NCBI RefSeq assembly: GCF_001194135.2
Contig: NC_068990.1
Coordinates: 37,525,417 to 37,589,416 of the forward strand
Length of the DNA stretch: 64,000 nt
From: Octopus bimaculoides
Lineage: Eukaryota
Direction: 5' to 3'
Shown in pieces: positions 3,930 through 63,685 of this stretch (positions are counted from its first letter, which is position 1; every line of letters begins with the position of its first letter). The notes under the pieces are model-generated. The model saw nothing but the letters and a program-made list of their open reading frames with translations, made no database searches and was not told the DNA's origin. The translations under genes were made by a program, and so were the position numbers.

Positions 3930-4390
3930 TGCGTGTCCATGTCTTTGTCTCCCAACACCTCTTGACAACCAATGCTGTTGTGTTTACATCCACAAAACTT
4001 AACGGTTCAGCAAAAGAGACCGATAGAATACATACTAGGCTTCAAAACAAAAGATAAATAAATGAGTGGTAGGATTGATTAGTTCAACTGAAGTTCTTCA
4101 AGGCAATGTTCCAGTATGACTGCGGTCTAATGACTCAAATGAGTGAAAAATGAATGTGTGGTAAGAACCTTGCTTCCCAACCACATGTTTCCAGGTTCAG
4201 TCCTACTGCCTGGCACCTTGGGCAAGTGTCTTCTGCTATAGCCTCAAGCCAACCAAAACTTTGTGAATGAATTTGGCAGATGGAAACTGAAAGAAGCCCA
4301 TCATATATATTCTCTTATTCTCTTATTTGTTTCAGTCATTTGACTGTGGCCATGCTGGAGCATCGCATTTAGTCAAATAACTGAAACCTT
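3930..4390. mobile_element. Cluster of SINE family A fragments (3' half +, 5' half +, 3' end -)
   Basis: Segments align by eye to the full-length copy at 24148-24563. Confidence 0.8.
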
Positions 4391-13109: not shown

Positions 13110-13335
13110 CCTTTCTTTCTTTTTCTTTTATTTGTTTCAGTCATTTGACTTCGGCCATGCTTGAGCACTGCTTTTAGTCAAACAAATTGACTCCGGGACT
13201 TTTTCTTTGTAAGCCTAGTACTTATTCTACTGGTCTCTTTTGCCGAACCACTTAGTTACGGGCACATAAACAAACCATCATTGGTTGTCAACTGATGGTG
13301 GGGAAGACAAACACAGACACATACATATATACATA
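13110..13335 (-). mobile_element. 3' half of SINE family A
   Basis: Reverse complement of the ...GCATGGCCG-AGTCAAATGACTGAAACAA terminus seen at 24500-24540. Confidence 0.8.
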
Positions 13336-13805
13336 TACGAGGGGTGTCTGATGTTGATTATGATGATGATGAGAATGAGGAGGATGGGGGGGTGAGGGGA
13401 GGAAGAGATGAGGAAGAGGTGAGGAGGTGGTGGTGGTGGAGGAAGAGGAGCATCACAACAATTATGATGACAAAGATAATGACAACATGATGATGACAAC
13501 ATGATGATGATGATGATAATGGTGGAGACAAGGATGATCATAATGAAGATTTTGATGGTGACACTGATGAAAATCTATAGCTAATACTTACAATTGCAGC
13601 AAATAGCAAAATAAAAAGATTTTCTAATTTATAAGGACTTAAAAAAGAACATTAGAAATTTCATGAATCAAACAATCCTAAAGGGCATAGGTGATTAGTT
13701 TTATCATATTTCATGTATTCTTTATCATTTACTTGTTTCAGTCATTGGACAGCAGCCTGATACTTTCTATATTTACATTTGACGGATATTTGTCCTCATC
13801 ATGTT

Positions 13806-13852
13806 TGTTAACACATTTCGGCTGATATGCCCTCTAGCCTTCATCAGGTGTC
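13806..13852 (-). ncRNA. Degenerate second copy of the hammerhead motif
   Basis: The reverse complement reads GACAC CTGATGA A GGCTA gagggcatat CAGCC GAAA T GTGTT. The GTT triplet is deleted. Confidence 0.6.
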
Positions 13853-14077
13853 TTAGGGAAATTTTGAACCTGGGTTCTCATTCCTTAGGTATATTTCGAT
13901 GTTATTGTTATTATTATTATTATCATTATTATTATTCAGGTCACTGCTTGGAATTGAACTCGGAATCTTGGGGTTAGTAGCCCGTGCTCATAACCACTAC
14001 ACCCACGGGCATATGGTGTAGTGGTTAAGAGTGCGGGCTACTAACCCCAAGATTCCGAGTTAGATTCCAGGCAGTGA

Positions 14078-14108
<31 letters not shown>

Positions 14109-14198
14109 CATGATGATGACGATGATGATAATAATAGTAATAATAACAATAATAATGATGATCATGATCATGATAACGACAACAACAACAACAACAAC

Positions 14199-14248
<50 letters not shown>

Positions 14249-14318
14249 TAATAATAATAATGACAACAACATCGAAAAATACCTTAGGAATGAGAACCCA
14301 GGTTCGAAATTTCCCCAA

Positions 14319-14364
14319 GACACCTGATGAAGACTGGAGGGTATATCAGCCGAAATGTTGTGTT
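14319..14364 (+). ncRNA. Minimal type I hammerhead ribozyme motif (Penelope-type), probably impaired in this copy
   Basis: GACAC CTGATGA A GACTG gagggtatat CAGCC GAAA T GTT GTGTT. It has both catalytic boxes, stem I GACAC/GTGTT, stem II with one mismatch, a loopless stem III and a GUU triplet. Confidence 0.7.
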
Positions 14365-14421
14365 AACAACAAACAAGATGAGGACAAATATCTGTCAAAT
14401 GTGAAAAAATGTAAATAATGT

Positions 14422-14720
14422 AGCCTGATACTTATTCTCTTGATTTCTTTTGCTAAATCACTAAGTTCTGGGATGTAGACGAAGCACAACTTGTTCTAAA
14501 GTAAGGGTTGAGGACAAGCACGAACACAAAGACATACACAGAGATATATACATATGCACACACATGCACCTACACACTTATATATATGCAGCAGGCTTCT
14601 TATAGTTTTCATCTGCCAAATCCATTAAGAGAACTTTGGCTGGTGTAAAGTGTCACAAAGTGGGATTGAACCTGGCACCATGTGGCTGGGAAGCAAACTT
14701 CTTAACATACAGCCATATCT
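14422..14720 (-). mobile_element. Old SINE family A copy that hosts the palindromic insertion (its 3' end is at about 13720-13765)
   Basis: SINE A sequence continues on both sides of the insertion; the head is at about 14650-14715. Confidence 0.7.
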
Positions 14721-24147: not shown

Positions 24148-24563
24148 GGAGGAGTGGCTGTGTGGTCAGTAGCTTGCTTACCAACCACATTCTTCTGGGT
24201 TCAGTCCCACTGAATGGCACCTTGGGCAAGTGTCTTCTACTATAGCCTCAGGTCGACCAAAGCCTTGTGAGTAGATTTGGTAGATGGAAATGGAAAGAAG
24301 CCCGTTGTATATATGTATATATATATGTATGCGTGTGTATATGTTTGTGTGTCTGTGTTTGTCCCCCCAACATCACTTGACAACCGATGGTGGAGTGTTT
24401 ACGTCCCTGTAACCTAGCGGTTCGGCAAAATAGACCGATAGAATAAGTACTAGGCTTACAAAGAATAAGTCCTGGAGTCAATTTGCTCGACTAAAGGCAG
24501 TGCTCCAGCATGGCCACAGTCAAATGACTGAAACAAGTAAAAGAGTAAAAAGAGTAAAGAGTA
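24148..24563 (+). mobile_element. Full-length tRNA-derived SINE family A
   Basis: A-box-like TGGCTGTGTGG, B-box-like GGTTCAGTCCC, an internal (TA/TG)n tract and an (AAGAGTA)n tail. Homologous to many partial copies in the window. Confidence 0.9.
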
Positions 24564-48861: not shown

Positions 48862-49818
48862 AGCTTCCGCTATCTGGGTGACCAAGTTAGTAGTGGGGGT
48901 GGGTGCGCTGAAAGTGTAACTGCTAGAATAAGAATAGCCTGGGCCAAGTTTAGAGAGCTCTTACCTCTGCTGGCGACAAAGGGACTCTCACTCAGAGTAA
49001 AAGGTAGACTGTATGACGCATGTGTACGAACAGCCATGCTACATGGCAGTGAAACATGGGCTGTGACTGCTGAGGACATGCGTAAGCTCGCAAGGAATGA
49101 AGCCAGTATGCTCCGCTGGATGTGTAATGTAAATGTGCATACCCGTCAGAGTGTAAGTATCTTGAGAGAAAAGCTGAACATAAGAAGCATCAGTAGTGGT
49201 GTGCAAGAGAGACGATTGCGCTGGTTTGGACATATGGTGAGAATGAATGAGGATAGCTGCATGAAAANNNNNNNNNNNNNNNNNNNNNNNNNNNNNNNNN
49301 NNNNNNNNNNNNNNNNNNNNNNNNNNNNNNNNNNNNNNNNNNNNNNNNNNNNNNNNNNNNNNNNNNNNNNNNNNNNNNNNNNNNNNNNNNNNNNNNNNNN
49401 NNNNNNNNNNNNNNNNNNNNNNNNNNNNNNNNNNNNNNNNNNNNNNNNNNNNNNNNNNNNNNNNNNNNNNNNNNNNNNNNNNNNNNNNNNNNNNNNNNNN
49501 NNNNNNNNNNNNNNNNNNNNNNNNNNGGCACATAAGATGTACCATCCTGAGCGTGACCGTTGCCATGGCTCTTGTGCGGGTGGCACATAAAAGACACCAT
49601 TTCGAGCGTGGCCGTTTTCGTGCGGGTGACACGTAAAAGCACCCACTACACTCTCTGAGTGGTTGGCGTTAGGAAGGGCATCCAGCTGTAGAAACTCTGC
49701 CAAATTAGATTGGAGCCTGGTGTAGCCATCTGGTTGCACCAGTCCTCAGTCAAATCATCTAACCCATGCTAGCATGGAAAGCGGACGTTAAACGATGATG
49801 ATGATGATGATGATGATG
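48862..49818 (+). mobile_element. 5'-truncated, apparently young RTE LINE: end of ORF, 3' UTR and (GAT)n tail
   Basis: The uninterrupted frame FRYLGDQVSSGGGCAESVTARIRIAWAKFRELLPLLATKGLSLRVKGRLYDACVRTAMLHGSETW...RRLRWFGHMVRM runs to the gap at 49268. These are RTE post-RT motifs (YLG, YGSETW, LRWFGH). Confidence 0.92.
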
Positions 49819-54786: not shown

Positions 54787-55078
54787 NTATACCGCTAAGT
54801 TATGGGTAGGTAAATGCTCCAACGTCAGTTGTCAAGCAACGGTGATGAGACAAACATAGACACAAAGACACACAAACGTAAATATATATATATATATATA
54901 TAATGATAGATAGATATATATACAATGGGCTTCTTTCAGTTTCCATCTACCAAATCCACTCACAAAGCTTTGTTCAGTTTGAGGCTATAGTAGAAGACAC
55001 TTGCCCAATGTGCTATGCAGTGGGCTTGAACCTGGAACAATGTGATTGTGAAGTAATCTTTCTTACCACACAGCACCT
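54787..55078 (-). mobile_element. SINE family A copy (3' part in the gap)
   Basis: Reverse complement of 24148-24420. Confidence 0.8.
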
Positions 55079-63229: not shown

Positions 63230-63685
63230 TGCTAAATTGCATCCAGGAGTGTCAAAAAAACAGTGTTATCTTTCAACAGGACAACATTCCATGTCATAGG
63301 CAAAGAATACTCATCAATGTTCGAGACACAAGGTATTGTTCCCACGGACTGTCCAGCTCAAAGTCCCAATATAAATCTAATTGAACACCTATGGGGAACT
63401 CTTGGTGAAGCTATCAGGAACACAACAATTGAAAATAAAGAACGTTTGTACCAAATGTTAAGAGAGGAATGGAGTAAAATTGCACCTAGCACCCGCAAGA
63501 AACTAGTTGATTCAATGCCTAACCGTATAAAAGCTGTATTTGATGCTAAAGGAGGGTCAGCCACATATTAAAACTAATCTATATTGCGACATATACCATA
63601 ATCTACCATGTGCACAAGTTTCATTAACATTGAAATAGCAGAACCCCAAAATATTGGGGTGGCCTAATACTTTTGGCCAAGGCTG
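63230..63685 (+). mobile_element. Tc1 (DD34E) 3' fragment with right TIR
   Basis: IFQQDNIPCH...CPAQSPNINLIEHLWGTL...LVDSMPNRIKAVFDAKGGSATY*, ending in CCTAATACTTTTGGCCAAGGCTG-TA. Confidence 0.9.

What the first reader, a model, noticed from the sequence alone, without database searches (positions are those of the whole stretch)
14006..14421. tRNA-headed SINE carrying a Penelope-type hammerhead ribozyme (candidate Pol III 'retrozyme')
Seen: each arm joins a tRNA-like head (A box TGGTGTAGTGG, B box GTTCAATTCC on the left arm), an (AAT)n spacer, and a tail containing GACAC-CTGATGA-A-stemII-GAAA-T-GTT-GTGTT. The two arms carry different stem II substitutions (GACTG and GGCTA against CAGCC), so together they reconstruct a perfect GGCTG/CAGCC stem. 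Established: Penelope-like elements carry minimal type I hammerheads whose loopless stem III needs dimerisation, and Schistosoma Sm-alpha is a precedent for a SINE with a hammerhead. Inference: the ancestral stem III was GAAAC-GTT (palindromic AACGTT, here CpG-decayed to AATGTT). This would be a non-autonomous, Pol III-driven, self-cleaving retroelement mobilised by PLE RT/GIY-YIG rather than by a LINE. I do not know of a description in cephalopods, but cannot exclude one.
Basis: partly seen in the sequence, partly recalled or inferred. Interest (0 to 1): 0.85.

Follow-up and report, generated by a model that had tools for sequence, protein, structure and literature searches.

The report
Inverted retroelement pair with hammerhead motif
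One old insertion in an octopus genome placed two head-to-head copies of a short non-coding retroelement whose tail carries a decayed minimal hammerhead ribozyme motif of the kind found in Penelope-like retrotransposons; it is a credible lead to a Penelope-dependent SINE, but only this single locus could be examined.

Summary
Window 13766-14421 holds two head-to-head inverted copies of one short element: promoter-like head, AAT-type microsatellite, and a ~150-nt tail.

The right tail (14319-14364) contains a complete minimal type I hammerhead. It has a 5-bp helix I, CUGAUGA, an extra A, a 6-bp helix II with one A•C mismatch, GAAA, UG and UU^. It is the only such motif in the window, and 0 of 300 shuffled windows held one as good.

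The left copy lacks 3 nt, so it has no cleavage triplet in register.

New here: a 12-nt direct repeat (AGCCTGATACTT) abuts both outer ends, so the pair is one insertion event, nested in an older abundant octopus SINE. A single duplication around an inverted pair, with the hammerhead ~60 nt from the 3' end, matches published Penelope-like element (PLE) insertion architecture.

Weak points:
- Rfam finds no hammerhead and no tRNA.
- ARAGORN finds no cloverleaf.
- There is no covariation.
- No further copy could be retrieved, so "SINE family", "Pol III" and "PLE partner" stay inferences.
- The locus is inverted, not tandem, so it is not a retrozyme by architecture.

Verdict: partly supported, moderate interest.

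The parts
13754..13765 (.). Left copy of the target-site duplication AGCCTGATACTT
   Evidence: Longest exact direct repeat between the two flanks. It directly abuts the outer end of the left arm. At least the last 8 nt (TGATACTT) have no counterpart at this position in paralogous host-SINE copies.
13766..13900 (-). Left arm, unique tail (3' part of the element, minus strand)
   Evidence: Aligns to the right tail at about 88-91% identity with two 3-nt gaps and one 10-nt gap. It ends ...AAATGTAAATATAGA against the duplicated target.
13810..13852 (-). Left-arm hammerhead remnant: GACAC CUGAUGA A GGCUAG..UCAGCC GAAA UG UGUU. The core boxes are intact, but 3 nt are missing, so there is no U-H site in register with helix I.
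   Evidence: Not found by the descriptor scan.
13901..13936 (-). Left arm (AAT)n spacer, about 36 nt
13937..14003 (-). Left arm head, with B-box-like GAGTTCAATTCC (13950-13961) and A-box-like GGGTGTAGTGG (13994-14004)
   Evidence: 64/70 identical to the right head
14004..14014 (.). 11-nt non-palindromic centre (CACGGGCATAT) between the arms. It is probably the extreme 5' end of one copy, 10-11 nt upstream of the A box.
   Evidence: 11 nt between arms I2; reading. The assignment to one arm is inference.
14015..14082 (+). Right arm head, with A-box-like TGGTGTAGTGG (14014-14024) and B-box-like AGTTAGATTCC (14058-14068), 44 nt apart
   Evidence: this is the element's only A+B pair found in the scan; 0.1 expected per shuffled window. 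No tRNA by ARAGORN or Rfam.
14083..14270 (+). Right arm microsatellite spacer (AAT, GAT, AAC units, about 190 nt), expanded relative to the left arm
14271..14421 (+). Right arm unique tail, ending ...AAATGTAAATAATGT at the target duplication
14319..14364 (+). Complete minimal type I hammerhead motif. Helix I is GACAC/GUGUU. Core is CUGAUGA (14324-14330) plus an extra A (14331). Helix II is GACUGG/UCAGCC with an A.C mismatch at 10.2-11.2. Then GAAA (14352-14355), U15.2 G16.2, U16.1 U17, with the predicted cut after 14359.
   Evidence: No Rfam hammerhead hit.
14422..14433 (.). Right copy of the target-site duplication AGCCTGATACTT, contiguous with the host SINE sequence

Best explanation
Window 13766-14421 is the product of one old retrotransposition event. 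The event inserted a head-to-head inverted pair of a short non-coding retroelement into a pre-existing copy of the abundant octopus SINE and duplicated 12 nt of target.

The unit has three parts:
1. About 80 nt with tRNA-gene-type A and B promoter boxes.
2. An (AAT)n microsatellite.
3. A ~150-nt tail that carries a Penelope-like-element (PLE) type minimal type I hammerhead about 60 nt from the 3' end.

Most likely mechanism (inferred):
- The unit RNA was made by Pol III from the internal boxes, starting about 10 nt upstream of box A and running through the T-run-free body.
- Its tail mimics the 3' end of an octopus PLE, so the PLE reverse transcriptase/GIY-YIG endonuclease copied it by target-primed reverse transcription.
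- That copying produced the PLE-typical inverted second copy, either by priming from both nicked strands or by snap-back.
- The hammerhead came along with the PLE 3' module. It did not set the 3' end of this insertion, because the copies extend 62 nt past the cut site.
- At this locus it is decayed: an A.C mismatch in helix II of the right copy, a 3-nt deletion in the left copy, and helix III reduced to A-U plus two G.U pairs that could form only in a dimer.

Shown: the anatomy, the target duplication, the nesting, the motif and its improbability by chance.
Inferred: Pol III transcription, the PLE partner, the existence of a family, and any catalysis.
For: - Two arms are 88-93% alike, each with the same three parts in the same order.
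- A 12-nt direct repeat abuts both outer ends. Paralogous host-SINE copies at 13117-13340 and 24306-24549 run straight through the right repeat copy.
- The hammerhead descriptor hits only 14324 in 64 kb. 0/300 shuffled windows held a motif as good.
- The motif shows the features listed for PLE min-HHRs, including the extra nucleotide after A9 and G10.1-C11.1. Dual motifs 100-700 bp apart on opposite strands were reported for PLE-derived copies (PMC4209133).
- PLE insertions often carry an adjacent inverted 5'-truncated copy and have the HHR near the 3' end (PMC8557442).
- PLEs are present and recently active in Octopus (PMC13282606).
- A and B boxes are 44 nt apart.
- The unit starts 10-11 nt upstream of box A.
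- There is no TTTT on the sense strand of either arm. The first TTTT lies 27 nt downstream of the right arm.
- The tail has no match to the RTE fragment or anything else in the window.
Against: - Only one locus, and the two arms stem from one event, so the head-spacer-tail unit has a single independent observation.
- No Rfam hammerhead family matches, even at E<=10 on 81 nt.
- No tRNA is found by Rfam or ARAGORN, even on a CpG-restored head down to 80% thresholds.
- A+B boxes alone are expected 0.1 times per window by chance.
- There is no compensatory change in helices I or II. Both stem II differences break a pair.
- The left copy lacks the cleavage triplet, and the polarity of that 3-nt indel cannot be set without an outgroup.
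- The hammerhead fold is not the predicted minimum-energy fold in the context of the tail.
- No octopus PLE sequence could be compared with the tail.
- No other copy was found in any accessible collection.
Confidence: 0.5

Rival explanations
1. The arms are simply the 3' ends of a PLE (severely 5'-truncated copies), or a PLE-derived non-autonomous element with no promoter of its own. On this reading the A/B-box resemblance in the 'head' is fortuitous, and transcription depends on read-through or on a PLE-type promoter, not Pol III.
For: - PLE insertions are highly 5'-truncated and often carry an adjacent inverted truncated copy (PMC8557442).
- Most genomic min-HHRs are dispersed single or dual opposite-strand motifs 'probably related to truncated PLEs' (PMC4209133).
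- No tRNA structure is detectable in the head.
- A+B boxes occur by chance 0.1 times per window.
Against: - The unit's 5' end lies 10-11 nt upstream of the A-box-like motif, which is where a Pol III transcript would begin.
- The sense strand has no TTTT over 250-420 nt of AT-rich sequence, while the antisense strand has such runs.
- The T-loop-like GTTCAATTCC/GTTCGATTCC and the GTAGTGGTTA D-loop-like strings sit at tRNA-like spacing.
Confidence: 0.22
2. A one-off chimeric retrocopy. A Pol III transcript from an ordinary tRNA-type SINE with an (AAT)n tail read through into a neighbouring PLE fragment. That hybrid RNA was retrotransposed once, so no head-spacer-tail family exists.
For: - Only one insertion event is observed.
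- A microsatellite in the middle of a SINE is what a former 3' tail followed by transduced sequence would look like.
- No copy was retrieved from any collection.
Against: - Both arms end at the same element position, within about 4 nt of the duplicated target. That points to a defined 3' end recognised by the reverse transcriptase rather than a random read-through end.
- The collections searched contain almost no octopus DNA, so their silence says little about copy number.
Confidence: 0.12
3. An ordinary LINE-mobilised tRNA-type SINE whose tail resembles a hammerhead core only by chance. The inverted pair arose by an unusual LINE-mediated event.
For: - Octopus genomes are rich in LINE-dependent SINEs (PMC13282606).
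- Rfam does not recognise the motif.
- There is no covariation.
- The relaxed descriptor hits 0.13 times per random window. A genome of about 40,000 such windows will therefore hold many chance hits.
Against: - A motif with all the extra PLE-specific features was seen in 0/300 shuffles.
- The core boxes, helix II and the helix I complement are shared by both arms.
- There is no poly(A) or simple-repeat 3' terminus.
- An inverted dimer inside one target duplication is characteristic of PLEs rather than of LINE-driven SINEs.
- The tail is unlike the RTE fragment in the window.
Confidence: 0.1
4. A foldback or MITE-type DNA transposon with ~240-nt terminal inverted repeats.
For: Long inverted arms flanked by a direct repeat. 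The whole element folds into one hairpin.
Against: - By my own recollection, a 12-nt duplication is longer than those of known cut-and-paste superfamilies.
- The outermost nucleotides of the two arms are the least conserved part (TCTATATT... versus ...AATAATGT), the opposite of transposase-bound termini.
- The arms contain promoter-like and ribozyme-like modules oriented outward, as in retroelements.
Confidence: 0.04

Closest known systems
Minimal type I hammerheads (min-HHRs) of Penelope-like elements, including dispersed solo and dual opposite-strand copies (Cervera & de la Pena 2014, PMC4209133; Lunse et al. 2017, cited there but not readable here)
   Same: - Open 5-bp helix I.
- CUGAUGA and GAAA boxes.
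- An extra nucleotide between A9 and G10.1.
- The G10.1-C11.1 pair.
- A 6-bp helix II.
- No loop 3, with only two nucleotides between A15.1 and U16.1 that can self-pair in a dimer.
- Two motifs about 480 bp apart on opposite strands.
- Location near the 3' end of the unit.
   Different: - No PLE open reading frame or pseudo-LTR is nearby.
- The motif sits behind a tRNA-promoter-like head and a microsatellite.
- The 15.2/16.2 self-pairing is only G.U.
- One copy has lost 3 nt.
- Homology of the tail to an octopus PLE was not testable.
Schistosoma Sm-alpha / Sj-alpha SINE-like elements with a hammerhead (Ferbeyre 1998 and Laha 2000, as summarised in PMC6765202)
   Same: A short non-coding retroelement that combines a Pol III-type promoter with a type I hammerhead.
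   Different: - Sm-alpha carries a canonical hammerhead with loop-loop contacts.
- It occurs in tandem arrays whose multimeric transcripts are cut to monomers.
- Here the motif is the minimal PLE form, the copies are inverted, there is a microsatellite between promoter and ribozyme, and the organism is a cephalopod.
Metazoan non-LTR retrozymes (Cervera & de la Pena 2020, PMC7229834; Li et al. 2026 preprint, 10.64898/2026.07.22.740005)
   Same: Non-autonomous, hammerhead-bearing, and thought to depend on PLE enzymes. The 2026 preprint relates retrozymes to PLE pseudo-LTRs.
   Different: - Retrozymes are direct tandem repeats of about 170-400 nt that yield circular RNAs by cleavage at two sense-strand ribozymes.
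- This locus has one sense ribozyme per strand and no tandem repeat.
- It has a Pol III-like head that retrozymes are not described as having.
Classical tRNA-derived SINEs with LINE-derived tails, such as the octopus SINEs of Ohshima & Okada 1994 (own knowledge; cited in PMC10886601)
   Same: Head with A and B boxes, target-site duplication, no coding capacity, no internal Pol III terminator.
   Different: - The tail ends in neither poly(A) nor a simple repeat.
- The tail shows a PLE-type ribozyme motif.
- The insertion is an inverted dimer inside one duplication.
- The head has lost any detectable cloverleaf.

Membership tests
Hammerhead ribozyme, type I, PLE minimal variant | Conserved core: C3 U4 G5 A6 N7 G8 A9 ... 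G12 A13 A14 A15.1 ... U16.1 H17, followed directly by helix I | tested here: met
   Right arm 14319-14364 has every core position, with H17 = U. The left arm fails: 3 nt are missing, giving GAAAUGUGUU.
Hammerhead ribozyme, type I, PLE minimal variant | Short open helix I (4-5 bp), long helix II closed by the G10.1-C11.1 pair, and an extra nucleotide between A9 and G10.1 | tested here: met
   - Helix I is GACAC/GUGUU, 5 bp including one G.U.
- Helix II is 6 bp with one A.C mismatch in each arm, at different positions.
- The extra A and the G10.1-C11.1 pair are present in both arms.
- The feature list comes from PMC4209133.
Hammerhead ribozyme, type I, PLE minimal variant | Self-complementary (palindromic) 15.2/16.2, so that two copies can build helix III | tested here: inconclusive
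   A15.1-U-G-U16.1 can self-pair only as A-U, U.G, G.U, U-A. An ancestral ACGU is possible, but both arms carry T. Cofolding did not single out this dimer.
Hammerhead ribozyme, type I, PLE minimal variant | Recognition by curated covariance models (Rfam Hammerhead_1, Hammerhead_3, HH9, HH10, Hammerhead_II) | tested here: not met
   No hit at gathering score on the window. No hit at E<=10 on 1001 nt or on 81 nt. Models built on hammerheads with a closed helix III may not cover the minimal form.
Hammerhead ribozyme, type I, PLE minimal variant | Covariation in helices across family members | tested here: inconclusive
   Only two copies, and they are not independent. There are 0 pairs with changes on both sides, and the differences break pairs.
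Hammerhead ribozyme, type I, PLE minimal variant | Self-cleavage (as a dimer) after H17 | not testable with these tools
   Needs in vitro transcription of monomer and dimer constructs.
tRNA-derived SINE (Pol III) | Internal A and B boxes at tRNA-like spacing near the 5' end | tested here: met
   - Right arm: TGGTGTAGTGG and AGTTAGATTCC, 44 nt apart.
- Left arm: GGGTGTAGTGG and AGTTCAATTCC.
- 0.1 such pairs are expected per shuffled window.
- The unit begins 10-11 nt upstream of box A.
tRNA-derived SINE (Pol III) | Detectable homology of the head to a tRNA (cloverleaf) | tested here: not met
   ARAGORN finds none on the window, and none on either arm or on CpG-restored heads down to 80% thresholds. 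There is no Rfam tRNA hit at E<=10 on 91 nt.
tRNA-derived SINE (Pol III) | Many dispersed copies, each with its own target duplication | tested here: inconclusive
   The window holds only this locus. The accessible collections hold almost no octopus DNA and gave nothing.
tRNA-derived SINE (Pol III) | Flanking target-site duplication and no internal TTTT terminator on the sense strand | tested here: met
   The 12-nt AGCCTGATACTT lies at 13754-13765 and 14422-14433. Neither arm has TTTT on its sense strand.
tRNA-derived SINE (Pol III) | 3' tail shared with an autonomous partner element | not testable with these tools
   No octopus PLE or LINE 3' ends were available, apart from an RTE fragment in the window, which does not match.
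PLE-type insertion (non-autonomous) | An inverted copy joined at the 5' end of the unit, and the HHR near the 3' end | tested here: met
   Head-to-head arms with an 11-nt centre inside one target duplication. The HHR cut site is 62 nt from the 3' end. The feature comes from PMC8557442.
PLE-type insertion (non-autonomous) | Sequence similarity of the unit's 3' part to an RT/GIY-YIG-encoding PLE of the same genome | not testable with these tools
   No PLE open reading frame is visible among window ORFs of 90 aa or more, and no octopus PLE DNA was obtainable.
Metazoan non-LTR retrozyme | Direct tandem repeats, each with a sense-strand hammerhead, giving unit-length circular RNA | tested here: not met
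   The copies are inverted, with one sense motif per strand. A read-through RNA folds into one long hairpin (-381 kcal/mol, z = -36). Circular RNA cannot be tested here.

The most novel reading that the evidence does not exclude
The locus is a member of a genuine dispersed family of Pol III-transcribed SINEs whose 3' module, including a minimal hammerhead, is borrowed from a Penelope-like element, and which is copied by the PLE reverse transcriptase/GIY-YIG endonuclease rather than by a LINE. That would be a SINE class with a PLE partner. It is not in the usual SINE classifications as far as I know, and I found no paper describing it. It would be found here in a cephalopod.
Probability: 0.35. 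Interest if true: 0.7.

Novelty: new variant of a known kind. Interest (0 to 1): 0.45.

Why it matters
All well-characterised SINEs borrow their 3' ends from LINEs. PLEs are a separate retrotransposon class related to telomerase, and their known dependants are tandem retrozymes and truncated copies.

A Pol III-driven SINE with a PLE tail would matter in three ways:
- It would show that PLE enzymes can be hijacked in the same modular way as LINE enzymes.
- It would supply a small natural template for studying what the PLE reverse transcriptase recognises. The conserved but poorly active minimal hammerhead is the obvious candidate.
- It would add a source of dispersed hammerhead motifs and inverted-repeat (dsRNA-forming) loci to cephalopod genomes, where SINEs make up about a tenth of the DNA.

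If the locus proves to be a one-off or a truncated PLE, it is an ordinary decayed repeat.

Tried and rejected
1. Rfam scans. Whole window at gathering score, 13600-14600 at E<=10, 14300-14380 and 14000-14090. No hammerhead and no tRNA. The only hits (MIR5380, mir-885 and others) merely reflect the palindrome centre and are rejected as artefacts.

2. ARAGORN on the window, on both heads and on CpG-restored heads at lowered thresholds. Nothing down to 80%. The 'genes' reported at 60-70% are not credible.

3. More copies in the window. blastn and an nhmmer profile of the two tails found only the two arms.

4. More copies elsewhere.
- Two six-frame chimeric protein queries against 5.8 billion proteins: none.
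- Exact-pattern scans of viral contigs, metagenome contigs and prokaryotic genomes: only 17-19-nt chance matches, with no extension by blastn.
- Exact-protein look-ups of two window ORFs: not on record.
- An RTE-fragment query showed that the protein collection holds only a few Octopus bimaculoides UniRef entries and sub-2-kb ENA contigs. The plan to sample octopus genomic DNA that way was dropped.

5. Literature. No paper found on a cephalopod SINE with a hammerhead or on a PLE-mobilised SINE. Supplements with consensus libraries are not held. Lunse 2017 and Ferbeyre 1998 are not held.

6. Thermodynamics. The hammerhead fold is about iso-energetic with alternatives for the 46-mer and is not the minimum-energy fold in the 151-nt tail. 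This is not informative for a motif expected to act as a dimer.

7. Considered and rejected:
- Assembly artefact or recent palindromic duplication. The arms differ by about 9-12% and by microsatellite length.
- Two independent SINE insertions. There is a single duplication around both.
Full report
**What is there.**

The window is a gapped, AT-rich eukaryotic assembly (16 N runs). An RTE-type reverse-transcriptase fragment at about 48.99-49.27 kb is 93-96% identical to Octopus bimaculoides UniRef proteins. The source is therefore that species or a close relative.

The finding's coordinates (14006-14421) are the right half of a larger structure. Repeat finding shows inverted arms 13910-14003/14015-14108 (93%), 13813-13936/14235-14358 (93%) and 13772-13809/14368-14405 (92%), with an 11-nt non-palindromic centre at 14004-14014.

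Each arm, read outward from the centre, has three parts:
- a ~70-80-nt head
- an AAT-type microsatellite, about 36 nt on the left and about 190 nt of AAT/GAT/AAC on the right
- a ~135-150-nt unique tail

No other copy of head or tail exists in the 64 kb (blastn; nhmmer profile).

**One insertion event, nested in an older SINE.**

It directly abuts the outer ends of both arms and is the longest direct repeat between the flanks.

Both arms end at the same element position (...AAATGTAAATA + 4 nt). The flanks belong to a copy of the abundant octopus tRNA-type SINE lying on the minus strand. Paralogous copies at 13117-13340 and 24306-24549 run without interruption through the sequence that corresponds to the right repeat copy and the right flank.

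Those paralogs carry about 62 nt that the host copy lacks just left of the insertion. The duplication is therefore certain for at least 8 nt (TGATACTT). It is 12 nt if the host copy already had that deletion.

The element is thus 13766-14421. The two arms are products of a single integration, so they are not two independent witnesses of a family.

The arms differ at about 9-12% of aligned sites, partly at CpG-type sites. If they were identical at insertion, the published octopus calibration (JC 0.09 ≈ 25 My to consensus; PMC13282606) puts the event very roughly 10-20 My ago. This date is an inference.

**The hammerhead motif.**

The right arm reads, from 14319:

GACAC | CUGAUGA | A | GACUGG-AGGGUAUA-UCAGCC | GAAA | UG | UU^ | GUGUU

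In standard numbering:
- All core positions are present: C3-A9, G12-A14, A15.1, U16.1, H17 = U.
- Helix I has 5 pairs, one of them G.U.
- Helix II has 6 pairs, closed by G10.1-C11.1, with one A.C mismatch at 10.2-11.2.
- One extra A follows A9.
- There is no loop 3, only U15.2 and G16.2.

[quoted passage not shown] They also note dual motifs 100-700 bp apart on opposite strands. Here the two motifs are about 480 bp apart on opposite strands.

A relaxed descriptor that I wrote finds this site and no other on either strand of the window. In 300 first-order Markov shuffles the relaxed descriptor hit 0.13 times per window. A motif as good as the observed one never occurred. "As good" means helix I of at least 5 bp, helix II of at least 5 bp with at most one mismatch, the extra nucleotide, and a two-nucleotide helix III.

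The left arm is not equivalent. It reads GACAC CUGAUGA A GGCUAG...UCAGCC GAAA UG UGUU. Three nucleotides are missing relative to the right arm, and a second 3-nt indel lies a few bases on. There is therefore no U-H triplet in register with helix I.

Both indels lie in short repeats, so their polarity cannot be decided without an outgroup. The rest of the motif is shared by both arms, including the helix I complement. I therefore consider loss in the left arm more likely than a chance gain in the right.

The two helix II differences are each one-sided G-to-A changes that create A.C mismatches. Pair counting gives no compensatory change. "Reconstructing" GGCUG/CAGCC is reasonable as an ancestral state of one inserted sequence, but it is not covariation evidence.

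The proposed ancestral ACGU at helix III is untestable here, because both arms have T. As it stands, AUGU can self-pair only through two G.U pairs.

No Rfam hammerhead model matches at gathering score, or at E<=10 on 1001 nt or on 81 nt. It may simply reflect that the models expect a closed helix III.

The hammerhead fold is not favoured thermodynamically in the context of the tail.

**The head.**

The A-box-like TGGTGTAGTGG (14014-14024) and the B-box-like AGTTAGATTCC (14058-14068) are 44 nt apart, as in tRNA genes. The left arm has GGGTGTAGTGG and AGTTCAATTCC.

Such a pair is expected 0.1 times per shuffled window, so on its own it is weak.

ARAGORN and Rfam find no tRNA, even on CpG-restored heads.

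Three circumstantial points favour a Pol III unit:
- The unit's 5' end (the 11-nt centre plus arm) lies 10-11 nt upstream of box A, where type 2 Pol III promoters start.
- Neither arm has a TTTT run on its sense strand over 250-420 nt of AT-rich DNA, while the antisense strands do.
- The first TTTT follows 27 nt after the right arm.

**Most likely mechanism.**

The anatomy is an inverted second copy joined at the 5' end, one target duplication around both, a ribozyme motif near the 3' end, and no poly(A) or simple-repeat terminus. [quoted passage not shown] It does not match what LINE-driven SINEs usually leave.

PLEs are present and recently active in Octopus (PMC13282606).

I therefore think the unit was a short non-autonomous RNA, probably Pol III-made. 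Its tail mimics a PLE 3' end, and it was copied by PLE enzymes through target-primed reverse transcription. The inverted copy arose either by priming from both nicked strands or by snap-back of the first cDNA.

The hammerhead most likely travelled as part of the PLE 3' module. It cannot have defined the 3' end of this insertion, because both copies continue 62 nt beyond the cut site.

At this locus a read-through transcript would fold into a ~240-bp hairpin (-381 kcal/mol, z = -36) that buries the motif. The copies are inverted, not tandem, so the retrozyme route (two sense ribozymes, circular RNA) is not available here.

**Rivals.**
- (a) The arms are truncated PLE 3' ends, or a promoter-less PLE derivative with fortuitous A/B boxes.
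- (b) A one-off chimeric retrocopy of a SINE read-through transcript.
- (c) A LINE-dependent SINE with a chance hammerhead-like string.
- (d) A foldback DNA transposon. This is disfavoured by the 12-nt duplication and by the poorly conserved terminal nucleotides.

None of these can be excluded without the genome.

**Comparison with what is known, and novelty.**

Three things are already known:
- SINE-like elements with Pol III promoters and hammerheads in schistosomes (PMC6765202).
- PLE minimal hammerheads and their dispersed solo or dual copies (PMC4209133).
- PLE-dependent retrozymes (PMC7229834; 10.64898/2026.07.22.740005).

I found no description of a cephalopod element of this kind, or of any SINE with a PLE-derived tail.

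If a family exists, this is a new variant of a known kind. If not, it is an ordinary decayed PLE-related insertion.

**What could not be done.**

Every route to further copies failed, because the accessible collections contain almost no octopus DNA. Copy number, family consensus, covariation and the PLE partner all remain open. The search of the source genome listed under next steps would settle them quickly.

Noticed in passing
window 13700-13765 and 14422-14720 (minus strand); paralogs at 13117-13340, 24306-24549, 3982-4310 and 54828-55074: The element is nested in a copy of a much more abundant octopus tRNA-type SINE that has several other copies in the window. These paralogs served as an approximate 'empty site'.
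   Followed up: partly
window about 13750-13757: Compared with its paralogs, the host SINE copy lacks about 62 nt immediately left of the insertion. It is unclear whether this is an older deletion variant or a target deletion linked to the insertion.
   Followed up: partly
window 13959-14059: Rfam reports sub-threshold miRNA-precursor hits (MIR5380 at 61.5 bits, mir-885 at 37 and 32 bits) over the palindrome centre. They reflect the hairpin, not homology. The ~240-bp inverted repeat would nevertheless give dsRNA if transcribed, a possible siRNA or ADAR substrate.
   Followed up: partly
window 14083-14270 versus 13901-13936: The internal microsatellite has grown about five-fold in the right arm and diversified into AAT, GAT, GAC and AAC blocks. 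The left arm kept about 36 nt. This is a strongly asymmetric fate for two copies of equal age.
   Followed up: no
window about 48990-49266 (+), cut by the N run at 49268: An RTE-type LINE reverse-transcriptase C-terminal fragment, 93-96% identical to O. bimaculoides UniRef proteins. It has no Pfam hit on its own and is unrelated to the element's tail.
   Followed up: partly
window 63263-63571 (+): An ORF with a weak DDE_3 (Tc1/mariner-type transposase) match, E = 1e-4, below Pfam's cut-off.
   Followed up: partly
window 13501-13575: An (ATG)n-rich stretch upstream of the host SINE contains the string CACTGATGAAAA, a reminder that CTGATGA alone is common. It has no hammerhead context.
   Followed up: yes
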